Positions 1-47,976 are shown, counted from the first letter of the stretch. The stretch: DNA of 64,000 bases from IMGVR_UViG_3300027770_000027:62001-126000; one strand, 5' to 3'. The notes: a model not told the origin generated them from the sequence alone. Translations and numbers: made by a program.

Positions 1-60
1 TGTTCATCTTGTTTTTCATCATGTAATAATATTAACGGACGTTGGGGGGAACTGCAAGGA

Positions 61-333
61 CTACTTCCGAGCTCTGGCCTTCTTGAACTGAGCCCTCACC
101 TTTGCAAAGGTCTCGTCCTGCTCGGGCTCCGGGTAGAACCAGTTCCAGGTGTTGCGGACTCCCTTGACCAGGAGCTCGAGGAGGCACAGAGGGATGAGGA
201 TCGGGGAGAGCACCACGGTGAGCAGAGCGGTGACAACGATCGTGGTGATACAGGCGCTCGCTAGTGCGTTGATCGTGGACTGGTGGCGGAGGCGGAAAGC
301 GAAGGCTTCGGTGGGTGTCATGGTGTCTTTCAT
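61..333 (-). CDS. hypothetical membrane protein
   Basis: 90-aa ORF with a hydrophobic stretch, directly behind a TTCCCC promoter. Confidence 0.8.
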   Translation of the reverse strand: MKDTMTPTEAFAFRLRHQSTINALASACITTIVVTALLTVVLSPILIPLCLLELLVKGVRNTWNWFYPEPEQDETFAKVRAQFKKARARK

Positions 334-375
334 CTTGTATATATCTTAGGTGAGGAGAGGGGGAACCGCACGGAC

Positions 376-468
376 TTAGTTGAGGTCGAAGAGGTAGATA
401 AAGGTCGCGCCGAGGCCTACGAGAAGGACGAAGTGAACTGTCACGGCTACTACTTGGAACGTTGTCAT
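376..468 (-). CDS. 30-aa single-TM microprotein (MTTFQVVAVTVHFVLLVGLGATFIYLFDLN)
   Basis: Not in the ORF track. Starts 7 nt after the -10 box of a TTCCCC promoter and its stop abuts the next promoter. Confidence 0.75.
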   Translation of the reverse strand: MTTFQVVAVTVHFVLLVGLGATFIYLFDLN

Positions 469-500
469 TGTTAAGATATTAAAGGATGTACTGGGGAACC

Positions 501-695
501 TCAAGCGAAGACTTCGTGGGCGATCCCGGACTCTGGCTGCTCGTAGGACTCGATGAAGAACCTCTTAGAGTCCTTCCGTTGCCAGATCCACTCCTCCGCG
601 GACTTCCGATCGAAGAAGACTCCGATGAACTCATTGCCGCCGTTGGAGAAGGCTCCGGCTTCCTTGAACACGATATGGACTTGGGTCTTGGTCAT
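501..695 (-). CDS. small hypothetical protein, paralog of 734-898 and of the C-terminus of 16880-17218
   Basis: V(H/Y)IV...FIGVF...A pattern; own TTCCCC promoter. Confidence 0.8.
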   Translation of the reverse strand: MTKTQVHIVFKEAGAFSNGGNEFIGVFFDRKSAEEWIWQRKDSKRFFIESYEQPESGIAHEVFA

Positions 696-733
696 AGTTC
701 TATTATGGGTTAGGAACTGGGGAAGCTCAACGC

Positions 734-898
734 TTATCGTCCGAGAGCAGGCAGGGGCTTCTGAACAGTCACCCAGTGGAGGATCTCGGTCGGGACTCGG
801 AACACCTTAGCTGCCTGCTCTGCGTCCTCGCGCTTGGCGTAAGCTCCGAGGAAAGCCTGATTGTCTTCGCGAACGAGAATGTAAACGGTGTCTTTCAT
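734..898 (-). CDS. small hypothetical protein (start revised to MKDTVY)
   Basis: TTCCCC-N11-TAAGAT module places the start at 898. Confidence 0.75.
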   Translation of the reverse strand: MKDTVYILVREDNQAFLGAYAKREDAEQAAKVFRVPTEILHWVTVQKPLPALGR

Positions 899-930
899 TG
901 TTAATATCTTAGTGGATCTAACGGGGAAGC

Positions 931-1128
931 TCAAGCCTCAAGAGCGAGGACGTTGAACGGGACCTGGACTACCTGATTGCTGGGAAGTTCCACGCAGACA
1001 TCCAGCTCGGTGTTCTTCTCCAGGCGAGCGGCCACGGACATGGCCTGCCAGAGAGTCTCGTGGGATGTGTGGATCCGGTAGGGCTTGTTGGGGTAGAGAG
1101 GGGAGCGAGTGAGGACGTTGTAGGTCAT
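931..1128 (-). CDS. hypothetical protein
   Basis: 65-aa ORF in a tightly packed run. Confidence 0.7.
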   Translation of the reverse strand: MTYNVLTRSPLYPNKPYRIHTSHETLWQAMSVAARLEKNTELDVCVELPSNQVVQVPFNVLALEA

Positions 1129-1140
1129 GGTGATTGGGAA

Positions 1141-1242
1141 TTAGAGGTTATGCTTAGCTGCTACGTAGGTCACGAAGACTGCGGCGACTCCGGTGAGAGC
1201 GACTCCGGTGAACATCAGGATGGGAAGGACTGTTTCAATCAT
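1141..1242 (-). CDS. 33-aa single-TM microprotein (MIETVLPILMFTGVALTGVAAVFVTYVAAKHNL)
   Basis: Not in the track; leaderless ATG 6 nt after TAAGAT. Confidence 0.75.
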   Translation of the reverse strand: MIETVLPILMFTGVALTGVAAVFVTYVAAKHNL

Positions 1243-1281
1243 GTAATAATCTTAGCACATGACTGGGGGAACCTCCCGCCC

Positions 1282-1530
1282 TCAATAGTGCCGTGTCTTT
1301 GACTCTGTCTTGACTCGCTCATACTCTGCTCGCGTCCTCTCGTCTTCCAAAGAGAGGAGTAGCCGGTGGAGTTGGCCTGCAGCAACCTGATAGGCCTTCT
1401 CGGCGGTGTAGGCTTCCCGGCGAAGGGCATTGACGGCATCCAGCTTATCTGTCTTGTGAGCAGAGAGACTGTCCAGGAGGTCGAGTTGTTGGCGGACGCC
1501 GGGGTTATTGAGGATGTCTTGGTTATTCAT
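1282..1530 (-). CDS. hypothetical coiled-coil protein
   Basis: 82-aa helical ORF. Confidence 0.7.
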   Translation of the reverse strand: MNNQDILNNPGVRQQLDLLDSLSAHKTDKLDAVNALRREAYTAEKAYQVAAGQLHRLLLSLEDERTRAEYERVKTESKTRHY

Positions 1531-1554
1531 AGATTTATTGGTTGTGGGGAAAGA

Positions 1555-1731
1555 TTAGTGGCGGTTCCGGGGATTGATTCCCTTCCCGGCGTTCTCCTGC
1601 CGGTGGATGATGACCCCGGCGATCACGAAGAGGACAATCACAGGCCAGAAGTTCACGGCGAGCTTGAGGAAGACCTGGCCAATGAGGGAAAGCTTGTCTG
1701 TGAGGGTCATGTCGAAGTGTTCTTGAATCAT
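1555..1731 (-). CDS. 58-aa membrane protein (MIQEHFDMTLTDKL...)
   Basis: Not in the track; TTCCCA-N11-CATAAT-N6-ATG; one TM segment. Confidence 0.75.
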   Translation of the reverse strand: MIQEHFDMTLTDKLSLIGQVFLKLAVNFWPVIVLFVIAGVIIHRQENAGKGINPRNRH

Positions 1732-1788
1732 GTTTCTATTATGGCTGGGAATGCTGGGAAGGGAACGGCTGACTTTAACATTGAGGTC

Positions 1789-1971
1789 CTACTTGCACAG
1801 GCAGTAGACTCCGAAGAGGGCCAGCCCTCCCACGATGAGGCCGTGGTTCCCCAGGAACGCGAGACATAGGGTTCCCAGGGCGGTTCCGGCCATCGCCATT
1901 CCTAGGAAGGCGGACGGGCATAGGAACCAGAGGGCTGCGAGAACGGCGAGGAACATCATTACTTTCATCAT
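1789..1971 (-). CDS. 60-aa hydrophobic membrane protein
   Basis: Almost entirely hydrophobic; MMK leaderless start. Confidence 0.8.
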   Translation of the reverse strand: MMKVMMFLAVLAALWFLCPSAFLGMAMAGTALGTLCLAFLGNHGLIVGGLALFGVYCLCK

Positions 1972-2032
1972 GTATATATCTTACAGGACTTGAGGGGGAA
2001 GGGAACGCCGGAACGGGAAGGAAGGGAAGCGG

Positions 2033-2057
2033 GGGAGCCCCCACACAGGAGCTCCCC
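2033..2057 (-). terminator. GC-rich hairpin after 2072-2719 (weak U-tract)
   Basis: GGGAGCTCC...GGGGCTCCC stem on the minus strand. Confidence 0.4.
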
Positions 2058-2071
2058 TATGATGAAAGTGA

Positions 2072-2719
2072 TTAGGCTTTGCGCCGGGGGCCTTTGGTTC
2101 CCTTCCGGGTATCCTCAGGCTTGCGCTTCATGTCCTTGGAGTTGCAGAGACAGAACTCAGACAGAGGACATTGGGAACAACCAGCGTCTAGGAAGATATC
2201 GGGGCGCTGGCAGACCCCACGCGTGAGTTCTTCCACGGCTTCTCTAGACTTGAAATCAATCTTAACACCCTTGGCATCAGGATTAAACTTTGGGAGCTCA
2301 GCACGGACCTTGTCTTTACGGTCCTCCATATCTTCTCGAGTAAGGTAGTCCTCCTTAACATTACTACCCACCGTGATATTATCCTCTTTGGCTTTACGGA
2401 CCTTCGGAACTTTAACTTGTTTCGCAGGAGTACTAGCCTTACGACAATCTCCACATACGAACTTAGTAAGAAGTAATTCAATGGTGTTATACTCCGGCTT
2501 AGCCAACTGGCGTTTCAGGTTATCCCCGAACATGGAGGTCTGCTTATTCTTACAGCAAGAGCAATTGATCTTCTGTACCGGGAGGCGATCATTCTCCTTA
2601 TAGAAGGCAACCCACTCCTTAAGGTTCTTGAACTGATCGCCTCCCGAGGCCTGCTTGATGGCCACCTTAGCGGCTTTGGCTGCTGCACCGAACTTCTTAC
2701 GATATACTTTCTTCATCAT
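2072..2719 (-). CDS. Lys-rich protein with several Cys clusters (putative Zn-binding nucleic-acid-binding early protein)
   Basis: CSCC, CGDC and CQRP...CSQC...CLC motifs; basic termini. Confidence 0.8.
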   Translation of the reverse strand: MMKKVYRKKFGAAAKAAKVAIKQASGGDQFKNLKEWVAFYKENDRLPVQKINCSCCKNKQTSMFGDNLKRQLAKPEYNTIELLLTKFVCGDCRKASTPAKQVKVPKVRKAKEDNITVGSNVKEDYLTREDMEDRKDKVRAELPKFNPDAKGVKIDFKSREAVEELTRGVCQRPDIFLDAGCSQCPLSEFCLCNSKDMKRKPEDTRKGTKGPRRKA

Positions 2720-2757
2720 GTAATAATCTTAGCTGAAGTTGTGGGGAAGGGACCGAC

Positions 2758-2991
2758 TTACTTGCCGCAGTAGGCTTCGTCGTACACCGCGTTCATCTCC
2801 TGAGCCGCTTCGAGGCCTTCGCTATATCCTTTGTCTCGGCCAGCTTCAAAGGTCTTCTTCACCAGGGTGACCAGGGAACCGATGTACACGTCCCGGAAGT
2901 CCAGGCGATCCATATTACGGACCGCAATCGTTTCGATCTCGGTGTCGATGTGCTTCTGCAGGAGGGAAAGGATTTCGTCGTTCTTCATCAT
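2758..2991 (-). CDS. DUF6900-like small protein
   Basis: IETIAVRNMDRLDFRDV...FEAG matches the recalled family pattern TLETRNSDxLDFHDV. Confidence 0.65.
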   Translation of the reverse strand: MMKNDEILSLLQKHIDTEIETIAVRNMDRLDFRDVYIGSLVTLVKKTFEAGRDKGYSEGLEAAQEMNAVYDEAYCGK

Positions 2992-3029
2992 GTAATAATC
3001 TTAGCTGAAGTTGTGGGGAAGCTCCCGGC

Positions 3030-3212
3030 TTATCGGCCGAGGTTGTTTAGCTTGCGAATGGCGGCGTGAACTGCCCTAAGCTGGTTTACCAGGGGGTCTC
3101 CCAGACCGACGAGGCCTCCGTCTAGGACGATCTCGTCGATCTGCTTGTTGATGTCCCTGGACCGGTCCTTAAGTGCCGCCAGGGTCTTTGCTCTCTTCAT
3201 CTTGCTCATCAT
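3030..3212 (-). CDS. hypothetical protein (start revised to MMSKMK)
   Basis: TTCCCC-N11-TATGAT-N6-ATGATG. Confidence 0.75.
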   Translation of the reverse strand: MMSKMKRAKTLAALKDRSRDINKQIDEIVLDGGLVGLGDPLVNQLRAVHAAIRKLNNLGR

Positions 3213-3265
3213 GTAATAATCATAGAGCAGAATATGGGGAAGCGCAAGCGCGAATTTGCGTCTCC

Positions 3266-5788: not shown

Positions 5789-6016
5789 CTAGTCAACAAG
5801 ATCCACTTGAATGCTAATCCCGTTGAATGTGGCTCCGATTCCTTTGTATTGGAATCGATCATCTGCAATACACTTCAAGGCTTCTTCCACTGCTCCAGCC
5901 GTACGAAGATCAACCGTATCATGTAGTTTACTATACGTACAATTCACCATCATACGACCATCTACACCCCAGGTCCGAACGATCCGCAGCTTCTGTTTCG
6001 ATTTGATCTTCATCAT
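5789..6016 (-). CDS. hypothetical protein (start revised to MMKIK)
   Basis: TTCCCC promoter with leaderless ATGATG. Confidence 0.75.
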   Translation of the reverse strand: MMKIKSKQKLRIVRTWGVDGRMMVNCTYSKLHDTVDLRTAGAVEEALKCIADDRFQYKGIGATFNGISIQVDLVD

Positions 6017-6035
6017 GTATATATTATGTAGGAGG

Positions 6036-6257
6036 TTAGGGGGAAGGTCCACCTGGTTGTCGGCTTTCTAAGACCTCATGGGTTGCAACCTGGCGAATCA
6101 ATTCAATATGCCTATCTGGGTAATCATAACAAGTAAACTTGTAAGAGTTACGAGCAGGCTGCTCATCTTTGAATTCACCCCAACACCAGAACTCTCCATT
6201 GTTATCTCTATAGCCCACTAGATAGGTATATTGATTATCACCGGTTCTCATATCCAT
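6036..6257 (-). CDS. small paralogous-family protein
   Basis: YxxLVGYRD..W...F.DE..A...I.LIR pattern. Confidence 0.7.
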   Translation of the reverse strand: MDMRTGDNQYTYLVGYRDNNGEFWCWGEFKDEQPARNSYKFTCYDYPDRHIELIRQVATHEVLESRQPGGPSP

Positions 6258-6679
6258 TCAGACTTAATAGTTACTTCTCTTTTGACGATTCGATATGTAT
6301 CACAATAAGGTCTACCAGAGTATTCGGCAATGTAATCATAGGCCTCTTTCAAGGTGTCTAGATTATACCTACGAACATTCCATTCATCTTTCTTTTCCCA
6401 GTCTTGAACTTCAATGTCATAAGAGATTCTAGTAGTGGTTTCCGCTGGCTTAGTATTGTTCTTACGAAAACAAAAAGACCTTTTATGTTCAATCACCTGA
6501 GCATCTAGGATCAAAGGGTCTTTGAAAAGTTCTTTAATGGCTATAGAAACATCATCTACATTATGATACTCTGAGGTCCTGTCGTAATCATCAGTTTGAG
6601 TATAGACCTCTACAGCATCTCGCTTTTTATTAGTCTTAGTGACCTCAATGGTATATACAGTTTTATTTAGGTATGCCAT
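6248..6679 (-). CDS. small paralogous-family protein, apparently two tandem domains
   Basis: YTIEV... and YDIEV...W...EA...YRIVKREV. Confidence 0.75.
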   Translation of the reverse strand: MAYLNKTVYTIEVTKTNKKRDAVEVYTQTDDYDRTSEYHNVDDVSIAIKELFKDPLILDAQVIEHKRSFCFRKNNTKPAETTTRISYDIEVQDWEKKDEWNVRRYNLDTLKEAYDYIAEYSGRPYCDTYRIVKREVTIKSEWI

Positions 6680-6685
6680 ATTAAT

Positions 6686-6886
6686 TTAATCCTTTGCTCT
6701 CGCACCATATATGGTATCATATCCACTATCATATCCAATCTGATAACCAGCTTCGAATCCTTCATTCAAAGCTTCCTTAGCAATCTGCCTGAATAGCTCT
6801 CGATGGTGCTCATAAGACATAGCTTTGTGTTTAGTCTCTAGTACTTTGTTAATGATCTTGTCAATGGCTTCGTATTCTTCTTCCAT
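6686..6886 (-). CDS. hypothetical protein
   Basis: GFEAGYQIGYDSGY repeats. Confidence 0.7.
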   Translation of the reverse strand: MEEEYEAIDKIINKVLETKHKAMSYEHHRELFRQIAKEALNEGFEAGYQIGYDSGYDTIYGARAKD

Positions 6887-6887
6887 A

Positions 6888-7106
6888 TTAGTAAGGGTAA
6901 CTTGATTCTACTCCATCTTGACGCCAAAAGCTAGCTAATTCATCAAAGAAGTCTTGTTCTTTGTAACTGGTATCCCAATAGAATTCAGCACCATAAGGAC
7001 TTTTGCCTTTAATGATCCACTTTTCTAATGAAGTGTAGTATTGTACCTCAAAAGTATAAGCTGCGGCAACATGCAATAAGGTTTGGGAAGGAGGATTGGA
7101 GGTCAT
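6888..7106 (-). CDS. hypothetical protein
   Basis: ORF track. Confidence 0.65.
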   Translation of the reverse strand: MTSNPPSQTLLHVAAAYTFEVQYYTSLEKWIIKGKSPYGAEFYWDTSYKEQDFFDELASFWRQDGVESSYPY

Positions 7107-7150
7107 AATAGAATAAACAGAGAGGAAAGACCTGTATTAACACACTTGTA

Positions 7151-7477
7151 TTAGTGGTTCAATTCCAAGCTATCAACAACGTCTTGGATGGTTTCATAAT
7201 CTTCTTCGGAGATCTCATTCTTAAAATGGGTCTTAGCGATCTCTACCCAATTAACCGCATTGAGATAATCTCCAACAGCTTGATACGCCAAAGACCCCTG
7301 TTTAAGGTCTGCGAACTCCAACTCTTCCACTAGCTGCTCAAAGGCATCTGCCATATGCTCTACATCATCGAACTCCTGGTCTTCTGCCATTGACGCGAAG
7401 ATCTCCTCATACATGAGGTTGATGTTCCAGGTCTGCTTGTTCGTCCAGCCGTTGTATGTCGTATCGTTTCTCATCAT
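7151..7477 (-). CDS. conserved phage hypothetical protein (YNGWTN..TW motif)
   Basis: Motif common in phage and mobile-element proteins; TTCCCC promoter. Confidence 0.8.
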   Translation of the reverse strand: MMRNDTTYNGWTNKQTWNINLMYEEIFASMAEDQEFDDVEHMADAFEQLVEELEFADLKQGSLAYQAVGDYLNAVNWVEIAKTHFKNEISEEDYETIQDVVDSLELNH

Positions 7478-7515
7478 GTAAATATCTTATAGGAAGAAAG
7501 GGGGAACCACACGCC

Positions 7516-7974: not shown

Positions 7975-8340
7975 TTACCGCTCCATGGAAGACATGAAAC
8001 GATCTTCGAAATCATTCATGTAGAGGAACTCTGGGTCATTCACCGGAGCATCAAAGGTTGGTTCAAACTTCCCGGCACTTTCAGGAAACTTAGCTTCTCC
8101 TGCCACTTTCCCGTTAATCAAGATACGGACACAACGAAGCTCGTTCGGGTGGCAGACATATTGCCGGGAGTTATTAACAACCCAATCCATCTCCCGCTTG
8201 AGGTCTTGCAGAGCACTGGCTCGGGTCATTCCCACGACCGAATAGATCGTATTCCAATGAATTACTCCAGTATCAGTGAAGACCTGGATCTGAAGGCGAC
8301 CGACGACTGTTTCTTCTGCGAATGATTGTGTTTCCATCAT
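7975..8340 (-). CDS. hypothetical protein
   Basis: Leaderless MM start behind a TTCCCC promoter. Confidence 0.8.
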   Translation of the reverse strand: MMETQSFAEETVVGRLQIQVFTDTGVIHWNTIYSVVGMTRASALQDLKREMDWVVNNSRQYVCHPNELRCVRILINGKVAGEAKFPESAGKFEPTFDAPVNDPEFLYMNDFEDRFMSSMER

Positions 8341-8382
8341 GTATATATCTTAGACGAGGTTGTGGGGAACCGCAAGGACTAC

Positions 8383-8601
8383 TTAAAGGACCACCTGCTC
8401 TGGCTCACTGGCCTGACACACTAGCTCGAGCACCTCCTCCATGTAGGAGACTCCTGCGGCGAAGTTCGCGCGGCCACGGTTGTCGGAGACGTACTGGAGG
8501 ATCACCTGGACTGCTTCAGCCACTGAGACGTGGTTGGCCTTGAGGATCTCTGCGGCGGCGGACTTGGCTGCTTCGGACTGGATGTATTCGTTCTTCATCA
8601 T
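8383..8601 (-). CDS. hypothetical protein
   Basis: MMKN start, own promoter, GC-rich codons. Confidence 0.8.
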   Translation of the reverse strand: MMKNEYIQSEAAKSAAAEILKANHVSVAEAVQVILQYVSDNRGRANFAAGVSYMEEVLELVCQASEPEQVVL

Positions 8602-8643
8602 GTTTATATCTTAGAGGAGGTAATGGGGAAACTCAACGCTTAC

Positions 8644-8904
8644 TTAGATGCCCTGGGCAAGTACGGCGTCCTCTGGGCTCTGCCAGTAGGTCTTCGAGAA
8701 GGTCACTATCCAGGTGTCTCTGTTCACTCGAAGGGCTTTGAACACCAGAGCATTGTCCTCATTGTCCAGCACCGTGATGGCATCCACTGAAGAGGGATGG
8801 AAGACGCGGACCTTGTTGACGATGTACTGGACGCGCTTGGCTTCCTTGGCGAGGACGTTGACTTGCTTCGTGCTGAGGACTCGTGTGTATGTGTTCTTCA
8901 TCAT
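8644..8904 (-). CDS. hypothetical protein
   Basis: MMKN start, own promoter. Confidence 0.8.
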   Translation of the reverse strand: MMKNTYTRVLSTKQVNVLAKEAKRVQYIVNKVRVFHPSSVDAITVLDNEDNALVFKALRVNRDTWIVTFSKTYWQSPEDAVLAQGI

Positions 8905-8913
8905 GTATATATC

Positions 8914-9135
8914 TTAGACGAGGTTGTGGGGAAACGCAAGGGCTTCTGCCTTCTCAAGTGCTTCTTCTCCATCCATTCCCAGCTTCTCGATCTGCTCGAT
9001 CGTGGCGTTGGCTGCTTCACAAGCGGACCTGCGGAGCTTTGCGGCTTCATCCCCCCAAACACCGTCCAGGTCGAAAGCCTGTTGGAGTTGCAAGGTGAGC
9101 TGCTCAAGGAGAATGTCGATCGTGTTTTTCATCAT
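8914..9135 (-). CDS. hypothetical protein
   Basis: MMKN start; C-terminus runs through the next promoter. Confidence 0.8.
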   Translation of the reverse strand: MMKNTIDILLEQLTLQLQQAFDLDGVWGDEAAKLRRSACEAANATIEQIEKLGMDGEEALEKAEALAFPHNLV

Positions 9136-9144
9136 GTAATAATC

Positions 9145-9345
9145 TTAGTCGATCTTAGGGGGAACCGCACGAGCATTGTGCTGCTGGGTCTCATAGCTCC
9201 ACATGACTTGTTCCCAATACTTGATTTCTAATTCCAGGTGTCTAGGAATTAAACATAAGTCTATCTTTCTTCTAGGAAGTTGATCATCTAATTCATTCAA
9301 TCGAGCAATGGCTTGTTCGTAATGTTCTCGAGATATAGGAATCAT
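9145..9345 (-). CDS. hypothetical protein
   Basis: ATGA overlap with the upstream gene. Confidence 0.7.
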   Translation of the reverse strand: MIPISREHYEQAIARLNELDDQLPRRKIDLCLIPRHLELEIKYWEQVMWSYETQQHNARAVPPKID

Positions 9346-9716
9346 TTGCTTTGTAACAATGCTACTCTTTCAGGAACTTCTAGTAACCAGGTTAATCTAA
9401 ACTCACCACCAAATCGATCGGAGATGTAATTTAAGCTACCTTCAATTGAATCAATGGATTCGTAACCATAGGTCTCATCTCCTGTTCGACGATCTGGTTC
9501 GTATGGTGTTATGCTTTTGTATTTTTTGCAGGTTCTTATGTTTCTTTGTTCAAGATAAGACCGATACTTGATAATAACATTCTGATGTTTAATGATTCGT
9601 TCACAGATCTTTTCTAGGTTCCAGTGATAATAAAAGTCTTCAAAGACCTGGTTAGCAATAACTGATCGCCAGGTTTTGGCTTTCTTCTCTAGTCGCTTAA
9701 AGGTCTTGTTCTTCAT
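9342..9716 (-). CDS. hypothetical protein
   Basis: ORF track. Confidence 0.7.
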   Translation of the reverse strand: MKNKTFKRLEKKAKTWRSVIANQVFEDFYYHWNLEKICERIIKHQNVIIKYRSYLEQRNIRTCKKYKSITPYEPDRRTGDETYGYESIDSIEGSLNYISDRFGGEFRLTWLLEVPERVALLQSK

Positions 9717-9717
9717 A

Positions 9718-9981
9718 TTACTTCTCTACAATAGTAACGATGCCTTCTAATACACCGTAAGTAGACTTCTCAGTATACTTGTAAGTGTCTGGTTGTTCTC
9801 CTTCTTTACGTACTCGTGTTAGAATCCAAAGGTCTGTTTGTTTCCAGGAGCAATTGATAAGCTTCTGATCCTTTTCAAGTTCTACGGTCATATTACCACC
9901 AACTGCTCGAGTAAAATAGTTACAGGAAGAAAGAGAAAGAATGGAAACAAGGCCGATTACTTTAAGAATGTTATTGATCAT
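9718..9981 (-). CDS. putative lipoprotein
   Basis: Signal peptide with LSSC lipobox; GG.MTV.L...WK..LW.LTR pattern. Confidence 0.75.
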   Translation of the reverse strand: MINNILKVIGLVSILSLSSCNYFTRAVGGNMTVELEKDQKLINCSWKQTDLWILTRVRKEGEQPDTYKYTEKSTYGVLEGIVTIVEK

Positions 9982-10023
9982 ACGTTAATAATACATGCTG
10001 TGATGGGGAAGAGCAACGTGGTA

Positions 10024-10272
10024 TTAACGAGAAACTCGACTGGTCAATGCTGTCTCATACTTGAGAGCATTACGAACTTCTTCAGGAGTTCCCCCGGTTG
10101 TTGCCAGGGTAACCAAATGGCGTAGAGCTGAGGTAAGAACCCCAGTTGCATAGGGGTAATTGATTGCACCATCTCCTTTACGGCGAGCAGCGTCTTCTAC
10201 TTCATTCAGGTAGTTGCGAAGCAGTTCGTTGATCTCTGAGACGCTGACGGTGTTCTTCTTTCTTTTCATCAT
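10024..10272 (-). CDS. hypothetical protein
   Basis: MMK start, TTCCCC promoter. Confidence 0.8.
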   Translation of the reverse strand: MMKRKKNTVSVSEINELLRNYLNEVEDAARRKGDGAINYPYATGVLTSALRHLVTLATTGGTPEEVRNALKYETALTSRVSR

Positions 10273-10303
10273 GTAATAATCTTACATGATGATGGGGGGA
10301 ACG

Positions 10304-12579: not shown

Positions 12580-12617
12580 GTAAATATATTAGTTAAAGTT
12601 ATGGGGAACCTCAAGGC

Positions 12618-12938: not shown

Positions 12939-12976
12939 GTAAATATATTAGCAGAGGATGGAGGGAACCTCCCGCT

Positions 12977-34424: not shown

Positions 34425-34431
34425 ATTAAAA

Positions 34432-34984: not shown

Positions 34985-35127
34985 AAAAACTCCTAGGGGT
35001 TGGTCTCATTATTAAGAGGTGCCCTAGGACATGATGAAAACTGCTATGTAACTATCAAAGATCTAACTTAATTATGGTTTAAGTATACCAGCAGTCATGG
35101 GGAACTGCTCCTGGAAATTTATTTATC

Positions 35128-37030: not shown

Positions 37031-37039
37031 GATTTTATA

Positions 37040-42509: not shown

Positions 42510-43547
42510 TTAGTCTTTGTAATTTTGATTAATAATTTTTACACTTAACATCTTATTGAGAGTTTCGCTGTATCTCAAATCTCCATTTAAATTATAACCT
42601 CGAATAACAATACCTTCTGCGGGTTTACCATTTTTAACATAAGTCATTTCATTGGCCAGAGTTTGTAATTTTTCTAACGTCAAATTTGGGATTTCGCTTG
42701 CTGTAAAAGATTCTACAAATGGTACAGAAAGACACATATGTGAAAAATCTGATTTCATTACATCTTGAGCTTCTTTATATACTCCAGTTGACAAGTCTTT
42801 TACATTAAAATGAAAGAAAGAAAGCTGCTGAAGGCCAGCTGGATTTCCTTGAATACCTGGTCCACAAATTTCTCCCTGCACTGCGGTGCCTAGTGGTAGA
42901 TAACTTTCAATTTGATATTTCTTAGCCATTTGCCAGTAAACACTGTCTGGTGTCTCCCTTAGCTCTAAGTTACGAGAACATACTTTAAAGTTTCCTTCGT
43001 GATCTTTGATGTAAGTAACAGAAGTCCCATCCATCTTGAGGGTAACACGGACAAACGCAGATGCTTTTAATTCTTCCAATACTTTAATATTAGACAAAAG
43101 GTTGTCTTCATCTGTTCTGCTTATGAATTGAGTAGGAAAATTACCAGCTACTTCCCCTCGTAAATTAGCTGGGATGGGTTTTTCGTATTTGGTAATACCT
43201 AACATCCCTGCAATAGAGGTGTCTTCTTCTGGATCATCTGAATGGTCCCAGATTTCTTGAGCACTAATTAGAGATCTAGGAAAAATAAGTCCTTGAGAAA
43301 CCGTACCTCGAAGCTTAACGGTTTTTACTCGAATAGGTTTGGTAGGATCATTCTTATCCCACAGAAATTCATTCCATACTCTCGGCTGGAGTACGGTATC
43401 AATAGGTACAAAAATTACTCCATCTCCTACCTTATATTCTCCCTTTTTGATAACGCTCTGCCACCCCTGCACTCGAGCAATCTCAATACGGTCTGCTCCT
43501 TCGATAGGAAGGATTTCTGTGATGGTTTCATATGACGCAAGTTCCAT
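42510..43547 (-). CDS. RNA ligase, DRB0094 family with N-terminal OB domain
   Basis: PIEGADRIE, SQGL, KMDGTS, QGE..GPGIQGN, EGIVI, K.IN. Confidence 0.9.
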   Translation of the reverse strand: MELASYETITEILPIEGADRIEIARVQGWQSVIKKGEYKVGDGVIFVPIDTVLQPRVWNEFLWDKNDPTKPIRVKTVKLRGTVSQGLIFPRSLISAQEIWDHSDDPEEDTSIAGMLGITKYEKPIPANLRGEVAGNFPTQFISRTDEDNLLSNIKVLEELKASAFVRVTLKMDGTSVTYIKDHEGNFKVCSRNLELRETPDSVYWQMAKKYQIESYLPLGTAVQGEICGPGIQGNPAGLQQLSFFHFNVKDLSTGVYKEAQDVMKSDFSHMCLSVPFVESFTASEIPNLTLEKLQTLANEMTYVKNGKPAEGIVIRGYNLNGDLRYSETLNKMLSVKIINQNYKD

Positions 43548-43585
43548 GTTACAAGATTAATATGGATACCGGGGAAGGGCAACAA

Positions 43586-43617
43586 AAAACCCTCTTGGAT
43601 TTTGCCAAGAGGGTTTT
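43586..43617. terminator. intrinsic terminator
   Basis: AAAACCCTCTTGG-N6-CCAAGAGGGTTTT. Confidence 0.85.
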
Positions 43618-43642
43618 GTTTTTTGTGCTTCTATAGGAATTG

Positions 43643-44035
43643 TTACATTGGAGGAAACTCTTCGCCGTCAGTTTCTCCTTCACCGGTTTCACTATCTACG
43701 GGAAATTCTTCACCACCAGCTTCTCCTTCTCCTTGATCTTGAGGTAATCTTTCTTGTAAACTACCAACAGCTGCCTGCACTGCTGATACAGCTGCAATCA
43801 ATCCTTGAAATTCTTCACTCATATCACCTTGTTCAAAGGTACCTATTAGAGGTTGGATGGTTTCTAGATGTGCTGCAGTTGCGTTTAAATCTTCTGTGAT
43901 GGCTTTGATTAGAGTTTTTTCAACTGCTAACGCCTTGGCGTCTTCTCCTGCTACTTGGCTTTCTGGACCAGCGGCGCGGGACTCTAGGACCATTCTATAG
44001 GATTTTTCTAATTGGATTGAATCTTTGTCTCTCAT
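43643..44035 (-). CDS. putative internal virion protein (MRDKDSIQLEKSYRMVLES leader)
   Basis: ATAAATA upstream; acidic tail. Confidence 0.8.
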   Translation of the reverse strand: MRDKDSIQLEKSYRMVLESRAAGPESQVAGEDAKALAVEKTLIKAITEDLNATAAHLETIQPLIGTFEQGDMSEEFQGLIAAVSAVQAAVGSLQERLPQDQGEGEAGGEEFPVDSETGEGETDGEEFPPM

Positions 44036-44233
44036 ATATTGTTTATATTTATTCTAACAGATACCCGAAGCATAAGCCATATAAAAAAACACAATTGTGT
44101 AAGTTGAAAGCCTATAAAGGAATAAAACAACCAATTCGGAATATCTGAATTGGATTTGTTGCCCATGTTAATATTTAGGCAACATCGTAAGAATTTTCGT
44201 GAGGTTCCCTAAAAAAATTTTTAGTATGTATAT

Positions 44234-44581
44234 ATGAAAATAACAAAAGAATGGATTCGCAAATGGGGTCTAATAAGTGTTATAGCGGCTGGCAATTATT
44301 TTGCAGGGTCCTTGACCTACCACTTGGCTTACAAACGAGGATATGAGGAAGGATATCAACAAGCTCAACAAGAGTGGCGTCTGGCTTTAATAGACGCAGA
44401 TTTTGCAGAGTATGACAGGAGAACTGGTAATTGGAAATTTCGAAGTATGGAAGAAGTTCTGATGGTGGGTACCATCATGGGTCAAATGCCGATATCCGGC
44501 ATATTTCCAGAACCGCCGGTGGATAAAGAAGATGTCAAATTTGCTCTGAGAAAAGCTTCTTTAAAATCTAAAATTAGATAG
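44234..44581 (+). CDS. membrane-anchored hypothetical protein
   Basis: Plus-strand TTCCCT-N11-TAGTAT-N6-ATG promoter. Confidence 0.8.
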   Translation: MKITKEWIRKWGLISVIAAGNYFAGSLTYHLAYKRGYEEGYQQAQQEWRLALIDADFAEYDRRTGNWKFRSMEEVLMVGTIMGQMPISGIFPEPPVDKEDVKFALRKASLKSKIR

Positions 44582-44897
44582 TTTCTTTTAATTTATTGAG
44601 AATTTGTTCGTGATATTCTTCTGGAAAATTCTTAAGTAAGTCCTCTATAATATTAGCTGTCACTCTAGCAGTTAAGGTATCTATTGCTTTGTCTGACTCT
44701 TCCTTAAGAGGAGGACATCCTAAACTGGCGTTTGAACCCTTCATTACAGCATTTAACAATTGGTTTTTTTGAAATTCTTGATTAATTTCCTCTGGAGGGG
44801 ATGTACATTTAGAAGATGTTTTAACTGTTGAGGAGTTATTTAAATTGTCTGACAGGGCTATAGTGTGGCGAAATTCTTCGGGAATATAATCTTCCAT
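44574..44897 (-). CDS. hypothetical protein (start MEDYIP)
   Basis: ORF track, start revised. Confidence 0.6.
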   Translation of the reverse strand: MEDYIPEEFRHTIALSDNLNNSSTVKTSSKCTSPPEEINQEFQKNQLLNAVMKGSNASLGCPPLKEESDKAIDTLTARVTANIIEDLLKNFPEEYHEQILNKLKETI

Positions 44898-44952
44898 AAA
44901 ATAATTTAGCAAAAAAGTCTTGTAATCAAGGTAAATTAAATTATAATAAATT

Positions 44953-45144
44953 ATGATTCTTGTATTATATGTAATTGCAGCAAATCTTTTGGCTATAACT
45001 TGCATAGCAGCTGCTACATATTTACAAGCCACTGGGCGTGAAGGATTTTGGGCTATGATTATTTTAGCCTGGTTGTCGGCAAGACTACCATATGGTCAAA
45101 CTACTTTTAACAATCAACCCAACAAAGATGAAAAATCAAATTGA
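44953..45144 (+). CDS. small membrane protein
   Basis: Two TM segments. Confidence 0.65.
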   Translation: MILVLYVIAANLLAITCIAAATYLQATGREGFWAMIILAWLSARLPYGQTTFNNQPNKDEKSN

Positions 45145-45361
45145 AATGAACAGTGGTGGTAATTTTTGTACCATATTACAAACTGCATTAATAATATTAA
45201 AATTAACTGGATCTATTACCTGGTCTTGGTGGTGGGTTCTAAGTCCAATGTGGGCTCCTATAGTTTTTATATTATTGTTATGTGGTTTGTTTTTAGCGGC
45301 ATTAATTGTAGCTGCGTGTTGTATTTTATTAACTAGTTCAGATAAAGATGAAGAATATTAA
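45128..45361 (+). CDS. membrane protein (LKLTG.I.WSWWWVLSP.W family)
   Basis: Motif common in phages. Confidence 0.8.
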   Translation: MKNQIEMNSGGNFCTILQTALIILKLTGSITWSWWWVLSPMWAPIVFILLLCGLFLAALIVAACCILLTSSDKDEEY

Positions 45362-45792
45362 GCTCCTGGTTTATCATATTTTGTAGATAATACAAACACA
45401 AATCCTTTTCGTTCCATATCAAACTCTAAGACATATGTCTTAGAGTTTTTTCTTTCTAAAATAGCTCCAGCAAAATTACCTCCTTTGGCCAATACAAACC
45501 CAAAAGTAGTATCATCAACGTTATTAATTTTTCCGTATACTTTATAATGAGTATCTGCTTCTTCAATTTCTGTAATCATTCCATTATAACAAAATCCGTC
45601 TGTTCTATAAATTTTTATTAATTTGCCAATAGGAACTTTAATAACTTGTCCGGGAACTACTATTCCATTTTTATCGGTAAGATAGGTTTCTTCTTCTAAT
45701 TGAAGTTTAAATCCCGGAATGGTTTGTTTGTCTGTAGATAAACCAGCAAACAATAATTGAGGAATTAATAGCATTGATAATATATATTTCAT
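45358..45792 (-). CDS. exported protein
   Basis: Signal peptide ending LFA. Confidence 0.7.
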   Translation of the reverse strand: MKYILSMLLIPQLLFAGLSTDKQTIPGFKLQLEEETYLTDKNGIVVPGQVIKVPIGKLIKIYRTDGFCYNGMITEIEEADTHYKVYGKINNVDDTTFGFVLAKGGNFAGAILERKNSKTYVLEFDMERKGFVFVLSTKYDKPGA

Positions 45793-46007
45793 TTTTTCTT
45801 TCTCCTTTTTTTGGGATCTTCTAGTTGGGGTTTACAAACATATTCGTGTCCAAAATATGTTATACGAAAGGGTTCTTCGAAATTTTCAAAACCTTCAGCT
45901 ATTAAATAATTCTTAAGTCTGCTCACATGTTCTTGATATTCATCTGAAGTATAAAAATCATGATCAAATACTCCATTTGCATCTATAGGATCTACACGGA
46001 AATTCAT
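45789..46007 (-). CDS. hypothetical protein
   Basis: ATGA overlap. Confidence 0.7.
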   Translation of the reverse strand: MNFRVDPIDANGVFDHDFYTSDEYQEHVSRLKNYLIAEGFENFEEPFRITYFGHEYVCKPQLEDPKKRRKKK

Positions 46008-46026
46008 GTAAAATAATTAGTCTCTT

Positions 46027-46061
46027 AAAAAGAAAAAGCCCCATCTTTTGAAGAAGGGGCT
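46027..46061 (-). terminator. intrinsic terminator downstream of the Hsp20 gene
   Basis: AGCCCC...GGGGCT followed by a T-run. Confidence 0.7.
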
Positions 46062-46120
46062 AAATCTTGGATTCGGCTACGTGAATCCGAAAAGGGATCT
46101 CTGGGACTCTTGTGTGTTGT

Positions 46121-46624
46121 TTAGTCTATCTGAATGGTTATATCTGTTGACTTTGGTAAAGAGACTGGAATAGTTACTTTAAGAAGTCCGTTGATAAATT
46201 TACTATGGATATTTTGTGCTTCTACTTTATCTGAGAGGGAGAATTCTAGTGTAGCTTTGCGAGCACTAATTCCACTTCGTAGATAAGATATAAAATGATC
46301 TTTGGGTGGAATTTCTTCCTGAGGATCTATATTAATGGTCAATCTATCTTCTTTGACCTTAATTTTAATATCTTGTTTATCTAAACCAGCAAGTGCTATG
46401 TGTACCTCATACTCATATACTTCATTAGTGTCGCAGGTTTTGCGAGATATGATGTCATATGGATAATGAACATTTGGAACATCAAAGGCTTTGGTCAGAC
46501 TCTTGTCAAAGTCTGCAAAGAATGTATTAAACCAATTATCGTTAAACAATGCAGGTAATTGATTGAAACCATGCAAAGTGTCCGTTAGGACCCTATTTGG
46601 GGTGTGTATTATTTTAGTTGTCAT
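46121..46624 (-). CDS. hsp20: small heat-shock protein (Hsp20/alpha-crystallin)
   Basis: YPYDI...IALAG..K.DI...GIS.R...NGLL.V. Confidence 0.92.
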   Translation of the reverse strand: MTTKIIHTPNRVLTDTLHGFNQLPALFNDNWFNTFFADFDKSLTKAFDVPNVHYPYDIISRKTCDTNEVYEYEVHIALAGLDKQDIKIKVKEDRLTINIDPQEEIPPKDHFISYLRSGISARKATLEFSLSDKVEAQNIHSKFINGLLKVTIPVSLPKSTDITIQID

Positions 46625-46697
46625 ATTACTCCTTATTTCTAAGCAAGTTATGTTTTGATTCTAGTCCACAAGAGCCCCAGAATCAAAAATATTTACC

Positions 46698-46892
46698 CTA
46701 AGAAGCGATCAAATCAACAATTTCTGCTACACAATCGAGCATGGCTTGCTTGGCCTCTTTGACACACATAGATTCCCTCCAATACTTTTCACACATATCA
46801 TTGGGAATGTCTAGAGGTGTGAGTCCGTAGAGTTTCTTGCACTCTTTTAATACCATTTTTTCAAAATCCTCAAATTGAATATGGACACTCAT
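46698..46892 (-). CDS. hypothetical protein
   Basis: ORF track. Confidence 0.7.
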   Translation of the reverse strand: MSVHIQFEDFEKMVLKECKKLYGLTPLDIPNDMCEKYWRESMCVKEAKQAMLDCVAEIVDLIAS

Positions 46893-46900
46893 AATTAGTT

Positions 46901-47755
46901 TTAATTGTTACCGATGAGAAGAGTTTTGCGAGGCCTGTCTTTCTTAGGAAAGAGAGCCCTTAAAGAAGAATCTAAATCTGTTCCTCCGTATGATAGGGCT
47001 TTATCAGCACCTGTCCAAAGTTCCTGATTGAACCTAGTATCGTCCTGGAATTGGGTAATTCCCTTGCCTAGAGAATTTCCACCACCACGAGACACATTTT
47101 CCTGAATGACGTTAAAGGTCTTCCATAAGTCATCTCCGGCGTCGAAATCACGGCGAGGTTTGAGAACTTCTTCAAAATCAAATTTCTTAGGCTGCATCAT
47201 GCGATAACGAAACCGAATGTAGTAGGCGTAACGAGCCAAAATTGTCTTTTCTTGTGGTGTCAAGATTCTATTCCTCATAGCATCAATTTTTGAAGTCATG
47301 GTAGAATAATCGGCAAAACTAGATTCCAACAAAGGAAGTAGGTCATCAAAATTACCTCCTTCTTTCTGACGATGTACCATCGGGCGAAGGTTGGAACAAA
47401 CTCCAGAAGGAGCAATGAGACCATTTTTGCAAACTAAACGAAAGAATCCCAAAGCCATAGAAAATTTCTTAGACAGGTTGTGACTATTTGAAATCAGTAC
47501 TTGAGGATATCCTTCAAGGGAAGAGATATCTTTATGCAACTGTGAAGTGTGGACTAGAGTCACTCGGTGTTGACCTGTGAGTCCTCCACGGTCCTGAGCT
47601 GCCTTATTAATTGCCCATCCATTTTCCAAGGCCTTGTCAATAATTTGACGAGTGGAGATGAAGGAGTAGCGAGCCGAAGCCTTTGCAGCTGGTGCGGTGG
47701 CGTTAATTGCAGGGCAACGGCTGATGGCTTGTTCGAGTGTCAGTGTTTCAATCAT
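46901..47755 (-). CDS. DUF932/DUF945 family protein
   Basis: Y.FIST, NSH, G.FRLVC.NGL, DLW.TFNVIQEN. Confidence 0.88.
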   Translation of the reverse strand: MIETLTLEQAISRCPAINATAPAAKASARYSFISTRQIIDKALENGWAINKAAQDRGGLTGQHRVTLVHTSQLHKDISSLEGYPQVLISNSHNLSKKFSMALGFFRLVCKNGLIAPSGVCSNLRPMVHRQKEGGNFDDLLPLLESSFADYSTMTSKIDAMRNRILTPQEKTILARYAYYIRFRYRMMQPKKFDFEEVLKPRRDFDAGDDLWKTFNVIQENVSRGGGNSLGKGITQFQDDTRFNQELWTGADKALSYGGTDLDSSLRALFPKKDRPRKTLLIGNN

Positions 47756-47976
47756 GTATCTATAGTAACCCCAGATGCGGGGAACCTCAACGGTAAAAAA
47801 ATGTGACAGATACTTTACGGTCGGATCTATTATTGACTCGATGGTCTAGATAAACAAACCCCTTACCCTCAATTTCATTACGATGTTGTTGAATTTGTCT
47901 ATTGACAGAAGTTTCTCTTTCTGCAAATCCCAAACCCGGAGCTATCGTAAGTGCTGTTGTGTATTCTAACATATAG

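What the first reader, a model, noticed from the sequence alone, without database searches (positions are those of the whole stretch)
17..47790. About 40 self-contained one-gene expression cassettes delimited by a repeated 35-bp promoter-start module
Seen: the minus-strand module [-35]-TTCCCC-N11-TAAGAT/TATAAT-like-N6-ATG recurs about 40 times. Starts include 22, 333, 468, 695, 898, 1242, 1731, 1971, 2719, 2991, 3212, 6016, 7477, 8340, 8601, 8904, 9135, 9981, 10272, 12579, 12938, 13441, 13882, 25078, 25764, 26548, 27863, 29195, 29320, 29706, 29995, 43547 and 47755, plus one on + at 44234. The previous gene's stop usually lies within about 10 nt of the module, so unrelated genes tile as promoter+ORF units. 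Several copies are identical across the spacer (41, 39 and 35 bp pairs), and 29709-29744 matches 2991-3026 almost exactly, 26.7 kb away. Known: PeSL-type promoter repeats mediate modular shuffling in T4-like phages. Inference: these modules act as recombination handles for a recombinase-free, integron-like array of host-takeover or anti-defence genes, possibly served by the RadA-like ATPase that itself sits in a cassette.
Basis: partly seen in the sequence, partly recalled or inferred. Interest (0 to 1): 0.85.

Follow-up and report, generated by a model that had tools for sequence, protein, structure and literature searches.

The report
Phage promoter repeats that shuffle genes
A large uncultured lake phage carries about 40 copies of one 45-base promoter set directly against the start codons of small genes, and sister phages show that genes are gained, lost and swapped at these copies, as in T4-type phages, but here without ribosome-binding sites or terminator hairpins.

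Summary

With the A of the ATG as +1, the module has textbook sigma-70 geometry:
- -35 (T/G)TG(A/C)GG
- 17-bp spacer that opens with an almost invariant TTCCCC
- -10 TAAGAT at -12..-7
- conserved A-2, C-1, A+1

Transcripts should therefore start on the start codon, i.e. be leaderless. One copy drives a tRNA, so the module is a promoter and not a translation signal.

The window is part of a 227-kb uncultured freshwater phage contig. Four closely related genome variants (93-98% identical) differ by cassette insertions, deletions and replacements. At least seven of these have junctions inside the module, producing hybrid modules. About as many other events use 7-13 nt microhomologies at module-free gene starts.

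The recombination-handle idea is therefore supported, but it is the known PeSL principle of T4-type phages. It is not integron-like, and nothing links it to the RadA-like ATPase.

Differences from PeSLs:
- no stem-loop
- no Shine-Dalgarno sequence
- the TTCCCC box
- GC3-rich cassette genes
- a late-type TAAATA-N6-ATG promoter class, which suggests leaderless expression across the genome

The parts
20..3248 (-). Distal, GC-rich end of the array. Eleven modules have ATGs at 22, 333, 468, 695, 898, 1242, 1731, 1971, 2719, 2991 and 3212. Most are single-ORF units of 30-215 aa.
   Evidence: Matrix scores 14-53 bits. ORF ends lie 2-21 nt from the next module. GC3 is 0.72. The array continues 1.3 kb beyond position 1 and ends at a hairpin terminator.
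6014..7513 (-). Two modules (ATG 6016 and 7477), each heading a short multi-gene block.
   Evidence: The 7477 ORF is DUF7249. Its homologue sits in a different context in L017.
8338..10308 (-). Six modules (ATG 8340, 8601, 8904, 9135, 9981, 10272). Four of them are back-to-back single-ORF cassettes.
   Evidence: The 9135 cassette has its homologue directly upstream of the ATPase in L016, L017 and L018.
12577..13918 (-). Four consecutive module-plus-ORF cassettes (ATG 12579, 12938, 13441, 13882).
   Evidence: Homologues occur in L015 and L017 in a different order and with different neighbours. The module at 13874-13912 is 100% identical to 10264-10302.
13912..25078 (-). Module-free block of about 25 genes, including a 714-aa protein. 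It is presumably transcribed from the module at 25114-25076.
   Evidence: No matrix hit in this stretch. Genes are tightly packed and lack Shine-Dalgarno sequences.
25076..27891 (-). Four modules (ATG 25078, 25764, 26548, 27863). The last has a 5-nt gap to the ATG.
   Evidence: The homologue of the 25764 cassette lies elsewhere in L015 and L016.
28284..29231 (-). Module plus a RadA/Sms-type ATPase gene (303 aa, ATPase domain only).
   Evidence: Pfam KaiC, AAA_25 and RecA. PDB RadA 5lkm, E = 2e-20. In the group whose ATPase is 70% identical, this cassette sits inverted between the homologues of 43643-44035 and 44234-44581. Homology ends at the stop codon and at the module.
29321..31173 (-). Four modules (ATG 29320, 29706, 29995, 31137). 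In two of them the first ATG is changed to ACG or AAG and the second ATG is kept.
33825..33863 (-). Module copy without an ORF, 22 nt upstream of tRNA-Leu(taa).
   Evidence: This shows the module is a promoter and not a translation signal.
31821..34506 (-). tRNA cluster, reached by transcription from the modules at 34892 and 33863.
   Evidence: 11 tRNAs by ARAGORN. Rfam finds a twelfth at 34039-34109.
34854..37066 (-). Weaker copies with TTCCCA or TTCCCG (ATG 34855, 35316, 37030, plus a doubtful one at 35111).
   Evidence: 13-20 bits.
43545..47791 (-). Outlying copies before the Rnl2-type RNA ligase (ATG 43547, weak) and the DUF932 gene (ATG 47755).
   Evidence: 12.6 and 37.9 bits. Pfam hits.
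44198..44236 (+). The only plus-strand copy, heading the short divergent unit 44234-44581.
   Evidence: 21 bits. In L013, L014 and L020 the ATPase cassette and its module are inserted just upstream of this gene's homologue.
49087..49102 (+). Example of the second promoter class, (A/C)TAAATA-N6-ATG (T4 late type). Others precede the ATGs at 47972, 40178, 14673 and 4814, and four tail-fibre genes just right of the window.
   Evidence: The distance from the motif to the ATG peaks at 6 nt.

Best explanation
The module is the consensus early promoter of an uncultured 227-kb freshwater tailed phage and is read by the host's primary-sigma RNA polymerase.

Its -10 hexamer lies exactly 6 nt before the ATG, so transcription should start on the A of the start codon. 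That would give leaderless mRNAs (0-3 nt leaders) translated without a Shine-Dalgarno sequence. Downstream genes in a block would be translated by stop-start coupling.

About 40 near-identical 40-55 nt copies lie in the same orientation at gene starts, so they also act as patches of homology. General homologous recombination (or copy-choice) between two copies deletes, duplicates, inserts or exchanges the promoter-plus-ORF unit between them and leaves a hybrid but functional promoter.

Status of each step:
- Shown: the motif, its geometry, its use before a tRNA, and crossovers inside it in relatives.
- Inferred: the transcription start, leaderless translation, early timing, and the recombination machinery.
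- Unexplained: the TTCCCC box at -29..-24. It is more conserved than the -35 hexamer. My best guess is that it is the site of a phage or host factor that tunes these promoters.
For: Geometry. In 79 distinct copies from this phage and its relatives, the -10 is at -12..-7, the -35 at -35..-30, the spacer is 17 nt, and A-2, C-1 and A+1 are 89-99% conserved.

Promoter, not translation signal. No Shine-Dalgarno sequence fits in the 6 nt before the ATG. SD-like 4-mers occur upstream of only 5 of 81 other genes, below the 13% chance level. One copy precedes a tRNA.

Independent support for the start position. A second, unrelated promoter class (TAAATA) sits at the same 6-nt distance from the ATG. The distance from TAnnnT to the ATG peaks sharply at 6 nt here, but not in cyanophage S-CREM1.

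Recombination:
- One site has three alleles (empty, a 77-aa cassette, or a 76-aa ORF plus a reversed 198-aa ORF), with the crossover inside TTCCCC...TAAGAT.
- The 69-aa, 58-aa and 71-aa cassettes and a three-cassette block are each present or absent, with 40-47 nt overlaps that are exactly the module.
- Two events have half-module junctions, one in GTAAGAT and one in GATGAAA.

Other comparative evidence:
- The variants are seen in independent assemblies: L016, L017 and L048; L018 and L045; L046 and L047.
- A strain variant that is 99.74% identical diverges at a module edge.
- Tandem paralogous cassettes each carry their own module.
- The ATPase cassette has been relocated and inverted.
Against: - No 5' ends could be mapped. 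The one RNA run is held only as contigs with flat depth.
- Modules sit at about half of all gene starts, so co-location with breakpoints is expected. About as many indels use module-free junctions. Adjacency between this phage and its relatives is lost at 8 of 11 module junctions and at 4 of 5 other junctions. A higher recombination rate at modules is therefore not demonstrated.
- In the 69-aa event the crossover lies at the extreme 5' edge, with about 1 nt of flanking identity.
- The same genome arrangement is found unchanged in at least five samples, so shuffling is rare on population time-scales.
- The host is unknown.
- If TTCCCC is an activator box, the class could be middle rather than early.
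Confidence: 0.72

Rival explanations
1. The modules are only promoters. Gene shuffling in this region is ordinary illegitimate or microhomology recombination, filtered by selection for intact genes. Modules appear at junctions only because they sit at gene starts.
For: About as many indels among L015, L017, L018 and L046 are at module-free junctions with 7-13 nt repeats such as TAATATGA. Adjacency is lost equally at both kinds of junction.
Against: Hybrid modules exist whose left part comes from one parental copy and whose right part comes from the other. Overlaps of 23-53 nt match the module exactly. Spacer subtypes that are otherwise variable are shared by copies many kilobases apart.
Confidence: 0.2
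2. The module is an activator-dependent (middle-type) promoter. TTCCCC at -29..-24, together with the TG at -34/-33, is the box of a phage-encoded MotA-like factor, so these genes are not immediate-early. This is compatible with the recombination role.
For: TTCCCC is 97-99% conserved, more than most of the -35 hexamer. It occurs only at chance level outside modules. It is kept in lineages whose orthologous genes are only 70% identical, while the rest of the spacer is replaced. T4-type phages have Mot-box versions of PeSLs (PMC4122927).
Against: A recognisable -35 TTG at the canonical distance is also conserved. No MotA or AsiA homologue was seen, but only 64 kb of the 227 kb was examined. The box lies a few bases downstream of where the T4 Mot box sits (my own knowledge).
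Confidence: 0.25
3. This is a dedicated, integron-like site-specific system. A recombinase, possibly helped by the RadA-like ATPase, recognises the module (for example TTCCCC) and excises or integrates single cassettes.
For: There is an invariant short core in one orientation and cassette-sized units. The PeSL authors raised the possibility of a helper protein (PMC2839356).
Against: Crossover points are scattered: -36, -32..-26, -29..-7, -13..-7 and +3..+9. No integrase or attC-like structure was found among the ORFs scanned. Cassettes carry their own promoters. The ATPase lacks any link beyond being a cassette itself.
Confidence: 0.04
4. The apparent shuffling is an artefact of metagenome assembly across a 40-55 nt repeat.
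For: The RNA-run contigs do break at the repeated modules, so assemblers are affected by them.
Against: Each arrangement but one recurs in independent samples and pipelines: the window type in at least 5 samples, the L017 type in 3, the L018 type in 2, and the L046 type in JGI and ENA assemblies. Identical stretches are shorter than the final k-mers of common assemblers. The L033 junction is not inside a shared repeat.
Confidence: 0.03

Closest known systems
PeSLs (promoter-early stem-loops) of T4-type phages RB49/phi1, PST/T4 and nt-1/KVP40 (PMC2839356, PMC4122927)
   Same: Many copies of a sigma-70-type early promoter lie in front of small ORFan genes, clustered in a hyperplastic region. Insertions, deletions and replacements between close relatives have crossovers inside the element. 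Degraded half elements are found at some junctions.
   Different: There is no stem-loop or terminator part and no Shine-Dalgarno sequence or leader. The -10 is 6 nt from the ATG. An invariant TTCCCC box opens the spacer. The cassette genes are GC3-rich in an AT-rich genome. The host and lineage are uncultured freshwater organisms. Mini-circles were not tested.
PmSLs (Mot-box middle-promoter versions of PeSLs) in Vibrio phage nt-1 (PMC4122927)
   Same: A conserved box lies upstream of a -10 element, and the elements are repeated in the plastic region.
   Different: The box sequence and position differ. A -35 TTG is retained here, and no MotA-like gene has been identified.
Leaderless promoters with the -10 adjacent to the ORF, in Deinococcus-Thermus (PMC12340547) and in Thermus phage phiYS40 (Sevostyanova 2007, cited from my own knowledge; paper not held)
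   Same: A TAnnnT -10 lies a few bases before the ATG, there is no ribosome-binding site, and many genes are served this way.
   Different: Here the element is a long, highly repeated module with a -35 and an extra box. It sits in an AT-rich T4-type phage and doubles as a recombination substrate.
Integron gene-cassette arrays
   Same: Tandem single-gene units in one orientation that are gained and lost one at a time.
   Different: Integron cassettes are promoterless and are bounded by attC sites cut by an integrase. Here each unit has its own promoter, no attC-like site or integrase was seen, and the crossover points vary.
Intergenic promoter repeats of halovirus HF2 (PMC8707807)
   Same: Repeated intergenic sequences of 29-58 bp have been shown to be promoters in a virus genome.
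   Different: HF2 has an archaeal TATA/BRE promoter, far fewer copies, and no reported role in cassette exchange.

Membership tests
PeSL regulatory cassettes of T4-type phages | Sigma-70-like -35 and -10 hexamers with a spacer of about 17 bp | tested here: met
   The logo of 79 copies has (T/G)TG(A/C)GG at -35..-30 and TAAGAT at -12..-7.
PeSL regulatory cassettes of T4-type phages | Stem-loop (terminator) immediately upstream of the promoter | tested here: not met
   The upstream stop codon is about 2 nt from the module. The 47 nt upstream fold no better than GC-matched controls, p = 0.45. There is no excess of terminators.
PeSL regulatory cassettes of T4-type phages | Shine-Dalgarno sequence between the promoter and the ATG | tested here: not met
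   Only 6 nt (consensus ATTTAC, also TATTAC) separate the -10 from the ATG. None of the 35 module genes has an SD-like 4-mer.
PeSL regulatory cassettes of T4-type phages | Clustered in hyperplastic regions among small genes of unknown function | tested here: met
   Strict-pattern copies occur only between 61.4 and 94.3 kb of the 227-kb contig. The cassette proteins are almost all ORFans.
PeSL regulatory cassettes of T4-type phages | Indels and replacements between close relatives with crossovers inside the element | tested here: met
   At least seven events among L015, L017, L018 and L046 have module-length overlaps and hybrid modules.
PeSL regulatory cassettes of T4-type phages | Mini-circles formed by exchange between neighbouring elements | not testable with these tools
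   This needs raw reads or inverse PCR. The single read-laying run returned contigs only.
PeSL regulatory cassettes of T4-type phages | The host genome is a T4-type myovirus | tested here: inconclusive
   T4-type Rnl1 and Rnl2, a gp38 adhesin domain and a tail-fibre gene row are present. A TAAATA late-type motif precedes the fibre genes. No capsid, tail or replication core gene lies in the sequence examined.
Integron cassette array | Promoterless cassettes bounded by attC sites and moved by an integrase | tested here: not met
   Every cassette has its own promoter. No attC-like imperfect inverted repeat was seen at ORF ends. No integrase was found among about 50 ORFs scanned. Crossover points vary.
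Leaderless (-10 adjacent to ORF) promoters | The -10 hexamer ends 6-7 nt before the ATG, there is no SD, and the start codon is ATG | tested here: met
   All module genes start with ATG.
Leaderless (-10 adjacent to ORF) promoters | The mapped transcript 5' end coincides with the start codon | not testable with these tools
   The RNA run is held as contigs only.

The most novel reading that the evidence does not exclude
This phage lineage runs its whole gene expression without ribosome-binding sites. Both its early promoters (the TTCCCC module) and its T4-type late promoters are fused to the start codon. The early module is then a minimal plug-and-play adaptor: any foreign ORF joined at its ATG, by as little as 7 nt of homology, is transcribed and translated at once. 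That would explain why the module-led genes form a compositionally foreign, GC3-rich pool that turns over between sister phages. The TTCCCC box would be a lineage-specific control or recombination-hotspot site.
Probability: 0.3. Interest if true: 0.75.

Novelty: new variant of a known kind. Interest (0 to 1): 0.58.

Why it matters
Promoter-repeat-mediated cassette shuffling was described in cultured T4-type coliphages and vibriophages. This case shows it also operates in an abundant uncultured freshwater phage lineage, with nucleotide-level junctions taken from natural populations.

It also suggests the principle does not need the terminator half of the PeSL. It links the principle to a fully Shine-Dalgarno-free and apparently leaderless expression strategy, which, if confirmed, would be unusual for a large virulent phage.

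Practical consequences:
- The module is a ready marker for finding early genes, the usual home of host-takeover and counter-defence functions, in this lineage.
- Gene callers that expect ribosome-binding sites will mis-annotate such genomes.
- The GC3 split between module-led and other genes offers a way to study where phage accessory genes come from.

Tried and rejected
- Near-identity search of GenBank phages found nothing. Protein searches gave only distant hits.
- IMG/VR scans with the DNA pattern found only this contig, its twin, and one unrelated phage family with a single chance match.
- The one RNA run holding the region is stored as contigs. Depth is flat and the contigs break at the repeated modules, so it gives no 5'-end or circle information.
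- The stem-loop part of a PeSL was looked for and not found.
- TTCCCC is neither depleted nor enriched outside modules.
- A test of whether module junctions lose adjacency more often than module-free ones was inconclusive (3/11 vs 1/5 kept).
- Host inference failed. Hsp20 and the RNA ligase point weakly to cyanophage- or pelagiphage-like relatives. A GC-rich cassette protein has homologues in phages of GC-rich proteobacteria. The cyanophage S-CREM1 lacks the N6 architecture.
- Walking along the contig by exact-protein look-up reached only tail-fibre genes on the right and no new sequence on the left.
- An apparent difference in cassette count in a Logan run turned out to be a difference in gene calling only.
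- Paper PMC1885378 (phiYS40) is not held.

Full report
**Source.** The window is positions 62001-126000 of IMGVR_UViG_3300027770_000027 (also Ga0209086_10000004), a 227,352-bp contig from a lake metagenome. GenBank phages hold nothing similar at the DNA level. Protein hits are distant. The window encodes:
- T4-type RNA ligases 1 and 2
- a RadA-type ATPase
- Hsp20 and DUF932
- 12 tRNAs
- a row of very large fibre proteins ending in a gp38-type adhesin domain

It is a large tailed phage with T4-type features. No core capsid or replication gene lies in the part I could read, so I do not claim membership of the T4 group.

**The observation.**
- The simple pattern with one mismatch gives 25 hits against 0.09 expected.
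- A matrix built from the strict copies gives 38 minus-strand hits and 1 plus-strand hit, against 0.05 in shuffles.
- One more copy, with a 5-nt gap, was seen by regular expression.
- Every coordinate in the finding is recovered. I add copies at 31137, 34855, 35316 and 37030, and one at 33863-33825.
- That last copy precedes tRNA-Leu rather than an ORF. This by itself shows the element is a promoter.
- The repeat finder confirms the family and the near-identical pairs.
The others lead longer blocks, one of about 25 genes.
- "Self-contained" is too strong. There is no excess of terminators inside the array. A strong hairpin plus T-run is found only at the distal end, 1.3 kb beyond window position 1.
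- Strict-pattern copies occur nowhere else in the 227-kb contig, so the array is one local region.

**Anatomy.** I pooled 79 distinct copies from this phage and its relatives and numbered them from the A of the ATG.
- The -10 TAAGAT is at -12..-7.
- The -35 (T/G)TG(A/C)GG is at -35..-30.
- The spacer is 17 nt.
- A-2, C-1 and A+1 are conserved at 89-99%.

This is the textbook geometry of a primary-sigma promoter whose start point is the A of the ATG. A Shine-Dalgarno sequence cannot fit in the 6 nt before the ATG.

Most copies read ATGATGAA. A few have lost the first ATG (AAG, ACG or AGG) and a few have only the first, so the leader is 0-3 nt.

The first six spacer bases, TTCCCC at -29..-24, are 97-99% invariant (the sixth is 77%). 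That is more than the -35 hexamer apart from its G. Outside modules the hexamer occurs at chance frequency. Its role is unknown.

The previous ORF's stop lies about 2 nt upstream of the module. There is no hairpin there beyond what GC content predicts.

**Leaderless expression is probably genome-wide.**
- SD-like 4-mers precede only 5 of 81 module-free genes, below the 13% chance level.
- Half of those genes start within 5 nt of the preceding stop.
- A second motif, (A/C)TAAATA, resembles the T4 late promoter. It precedes tail-fibre genes and several others, and its distance to the ATG also peaks at 6 nt.

Two unrelated promoter classes sharing one spacing is best explained by a constraint that the transcript must begin at the AUG. 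The hyperplastic region of cyanophage S-CREM1, the closest cultured hit for one gene, shows no such peak. I could not map 5' ends. The only RNA run is stored as contigs with flat depth.

**Relatives.** A scan of JGI metagenomes with an alignment of the ATPase, plus exact-protein look-ups, gave three tiers.

*Tier 1: the same phage.*
- It is 99.7-100% identical in at least five samples, with an unchanged cassette order.
- One exception is a 4.5-kb contig (L033) that is 99.74% identical for 3.8 kb. It then diverges immediately after a stop codon, at the 5' edge of a module, into different cassettes.

*Tier 2: a sister clade.*
- Its ATPase is 84% identical at the protein level.
- It has four genome variants that are 93-98% identical to one another in shared DNA: L015; L016/L017/L048; L018/L045; L046/L047.
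- All but L015 are seen in two or three independent assemblies.

*Tier 3: two lineages at about 70% identity.* These are L013/L020 and L014/L021.

All three tiers carry the module, including TTCCC. Lineages whose ATPase is only about 37% identical do not carry it.

**Junctions among the sister-clade variants.**
- One site has three alleles: empty, a 77-aa cassette, or a 76-aa ORF plus a reversed 198-aa ORF. The empty allele's module is the left part of one flanking module joined to the right part of the other, with the crossover within the 23 nt from TTCCCC to TAAGAT.
- A 69-aa, a 58-aa and a 71-aa cassette and a block of three cassettes are each present or absent, with 40-47 nt overlaps that are exactly the module.
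- Two cassettes are replaced by two others between conserved flanking modules.
- At another site the -10 (GTAAGAT) recombined with a chance match at the end of the upstream gene. This left a promoter stump in two variants. A third variant carries two genes there and a fourth carries one.
- One ORF was lost by a crossover in GATGAAA at the start codon.

Other indels lie at module-free junctions and use 7-13 nt repeats formed by the stop-start region, for example TAATATGA. Crossover positions range from -36 to +9. This fits homology-dependent exchange and not a site-specific cut.

**Comparison with the more distant relatives.**
- Against the sister clade, homologous cassettes are in a completely different order. 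BLAST segments overlap by about 44 nt at modules.
- In the 70% lineages the ATPase cassette sits inverted next to the homologue of 44234-44581. Homology stops at its stop codon and in its module.
- Tandem paralogous cassettes, each with its own module, lie just left of the window.

**Limits.**
- Modules occupy about half of the gene starts. Among junctions at gene boundaries in L017, 8 are at modules and about 7 are not.
- Adjacency between this phage and its relatives is lost at both kinds of junction.
- I therefore cannot say that modules raise the exchange rate. I can say only that exchanges demonstrably run through them.
- The direction of each event (gain or loss) is unknown.
- Misassembly at repeats is a concern in metagenomes. 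It is countered by the replicate assemblies and by identical stretches that are shorter than typical final k-mers.

**Comparison with known systems.**
- This is the PeSL principle (PMC2839356, PMC4122927): repeated early promoters in hyperplastic regions that mediate modular shuffling. It lacks two of the PeSL's four parts (the stem-loop and the Shine-Dalgarno sequence) and has an extra invariant box.
- It is not integron-like. Cassettes carry their own promoters, no attC-like site or integrase was seen, and the crossovers vary.
- The RadA-type ATPase is just one of the mobile cassettes.
- The leaderless layout matches the "-10 adjacent to ORF" mode described for Deinococcus-Thermus (PMC12340547). 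To my knowledge it also matches Thermus phage phiYS40.
- Transcript maps of the giant phages phiKZ and AR9 found no leaderless transcripts (PMC8244752, PMC5312081).
- I found no report of this layout for a T4-type phage in the held library.

**Composition.**
- Module-led ORFs have a mean GC3 of 0.53, against 0.29 for all other ORFs (p = 7e-12). The value reaches 0.72 in the distal 4 kb.
- They use fewer of the codons read by the phage's own tRNAs.
- The trend holds in relatives, and GC3 is conserved between orthologues.
- One GC-rich cassette protein has homologues in phages of GC-rich proteobacteria.

Either these genes come from a GC-richer gene pool, or early genes are kept on host-like codons. 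I could not decide between the two.

**Verdict.**
- It is a new variant of a known kind.
- Its main added interest is the apparently Shine-Dalgarno-free, leaderless expression strategy and the unexplained TTCCCC box.

Noticed in passing
window 1-48000 (strongest in 1-4000): Module-led ORFs are GC3-rich (mean 0.53, and 0.72 at the distal end) while all other ORFs average 0.29. They also use fewer codons served by the phage's own tRNAs. GC3 is conserved between orthologues in relatives.
   Followed up: partly
window 49087-49102 (+); ATGs at 47972, 40178, 14673, 4814 (-); L052 1243, 8642, 10001, 11458: A second promoter-like class, (A/C)TAAATA-N6-ATG, resembles the T4 late promoter and also abuts the start codon. 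It precedes tail-fibre genes.
   Followed up: partly
whole window: Virtually no gene has a Shine-Dalgarno sequence (5 of 81, below chance). Half of the module-free genes start within 5 nt of the preceding stop, often as TAATATG.
   Followed up: partly
window 34039-34109 (-): Rfam finds a twelfth tRNA (50 bits) that ARAGORN missed. It is 84% similar to the neighbouring tRNA-Lys region.
   Followed up: partly
window 10791-10856, 11350-11415, 31556-31621, 43977-44042: Four genes share a conserved stretch of about 66 nt at their 5' ends (67-74% identical), i.e. a common N-terminal segment on otherwise different proteins.
   Followed up: no
L032 4780-4815 (1.3 kb left of window position 1): A strong GC hairpin followed by a T-run (-32 kcal/mol for the 76-nt stretch folded, L032 4755-4830; z = -2.7) ends the array. 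A very GC-rich non-coding stretch follows it.
   Followed up: partly
L032 3838-4074 and 4113-4337: Two adjacent cassettes encode paralogous 78-aa and 74-aa proteins, each behind its own module. This looks like a tandem cassette duplication.
   Followed up: partly
window 1530-1555 (-): A truncated module (TTCCCC plus the first spacer bases, then AATAAAT close to the ATG) precedes the ORF starting at 1530. It looks like a degraded or recombined copy.
   Followed up: no
window 37962-43547 (-): An Rnl1-type ligase, an AAA_33 kinase-like protein, an AAA ATPase and an Rnl2-type ligase with an OB domain lie next to the tRNA cluster. Together they look like an RNA or tRNA repair set, as in T4.
   Followed up: no
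window 50812-56016 (+): A 1734-aa protein with VWA and several Ig-like domains lies opposite the fibre genes. A strain in another sample has a 1717-aa version.
   Followed up: no
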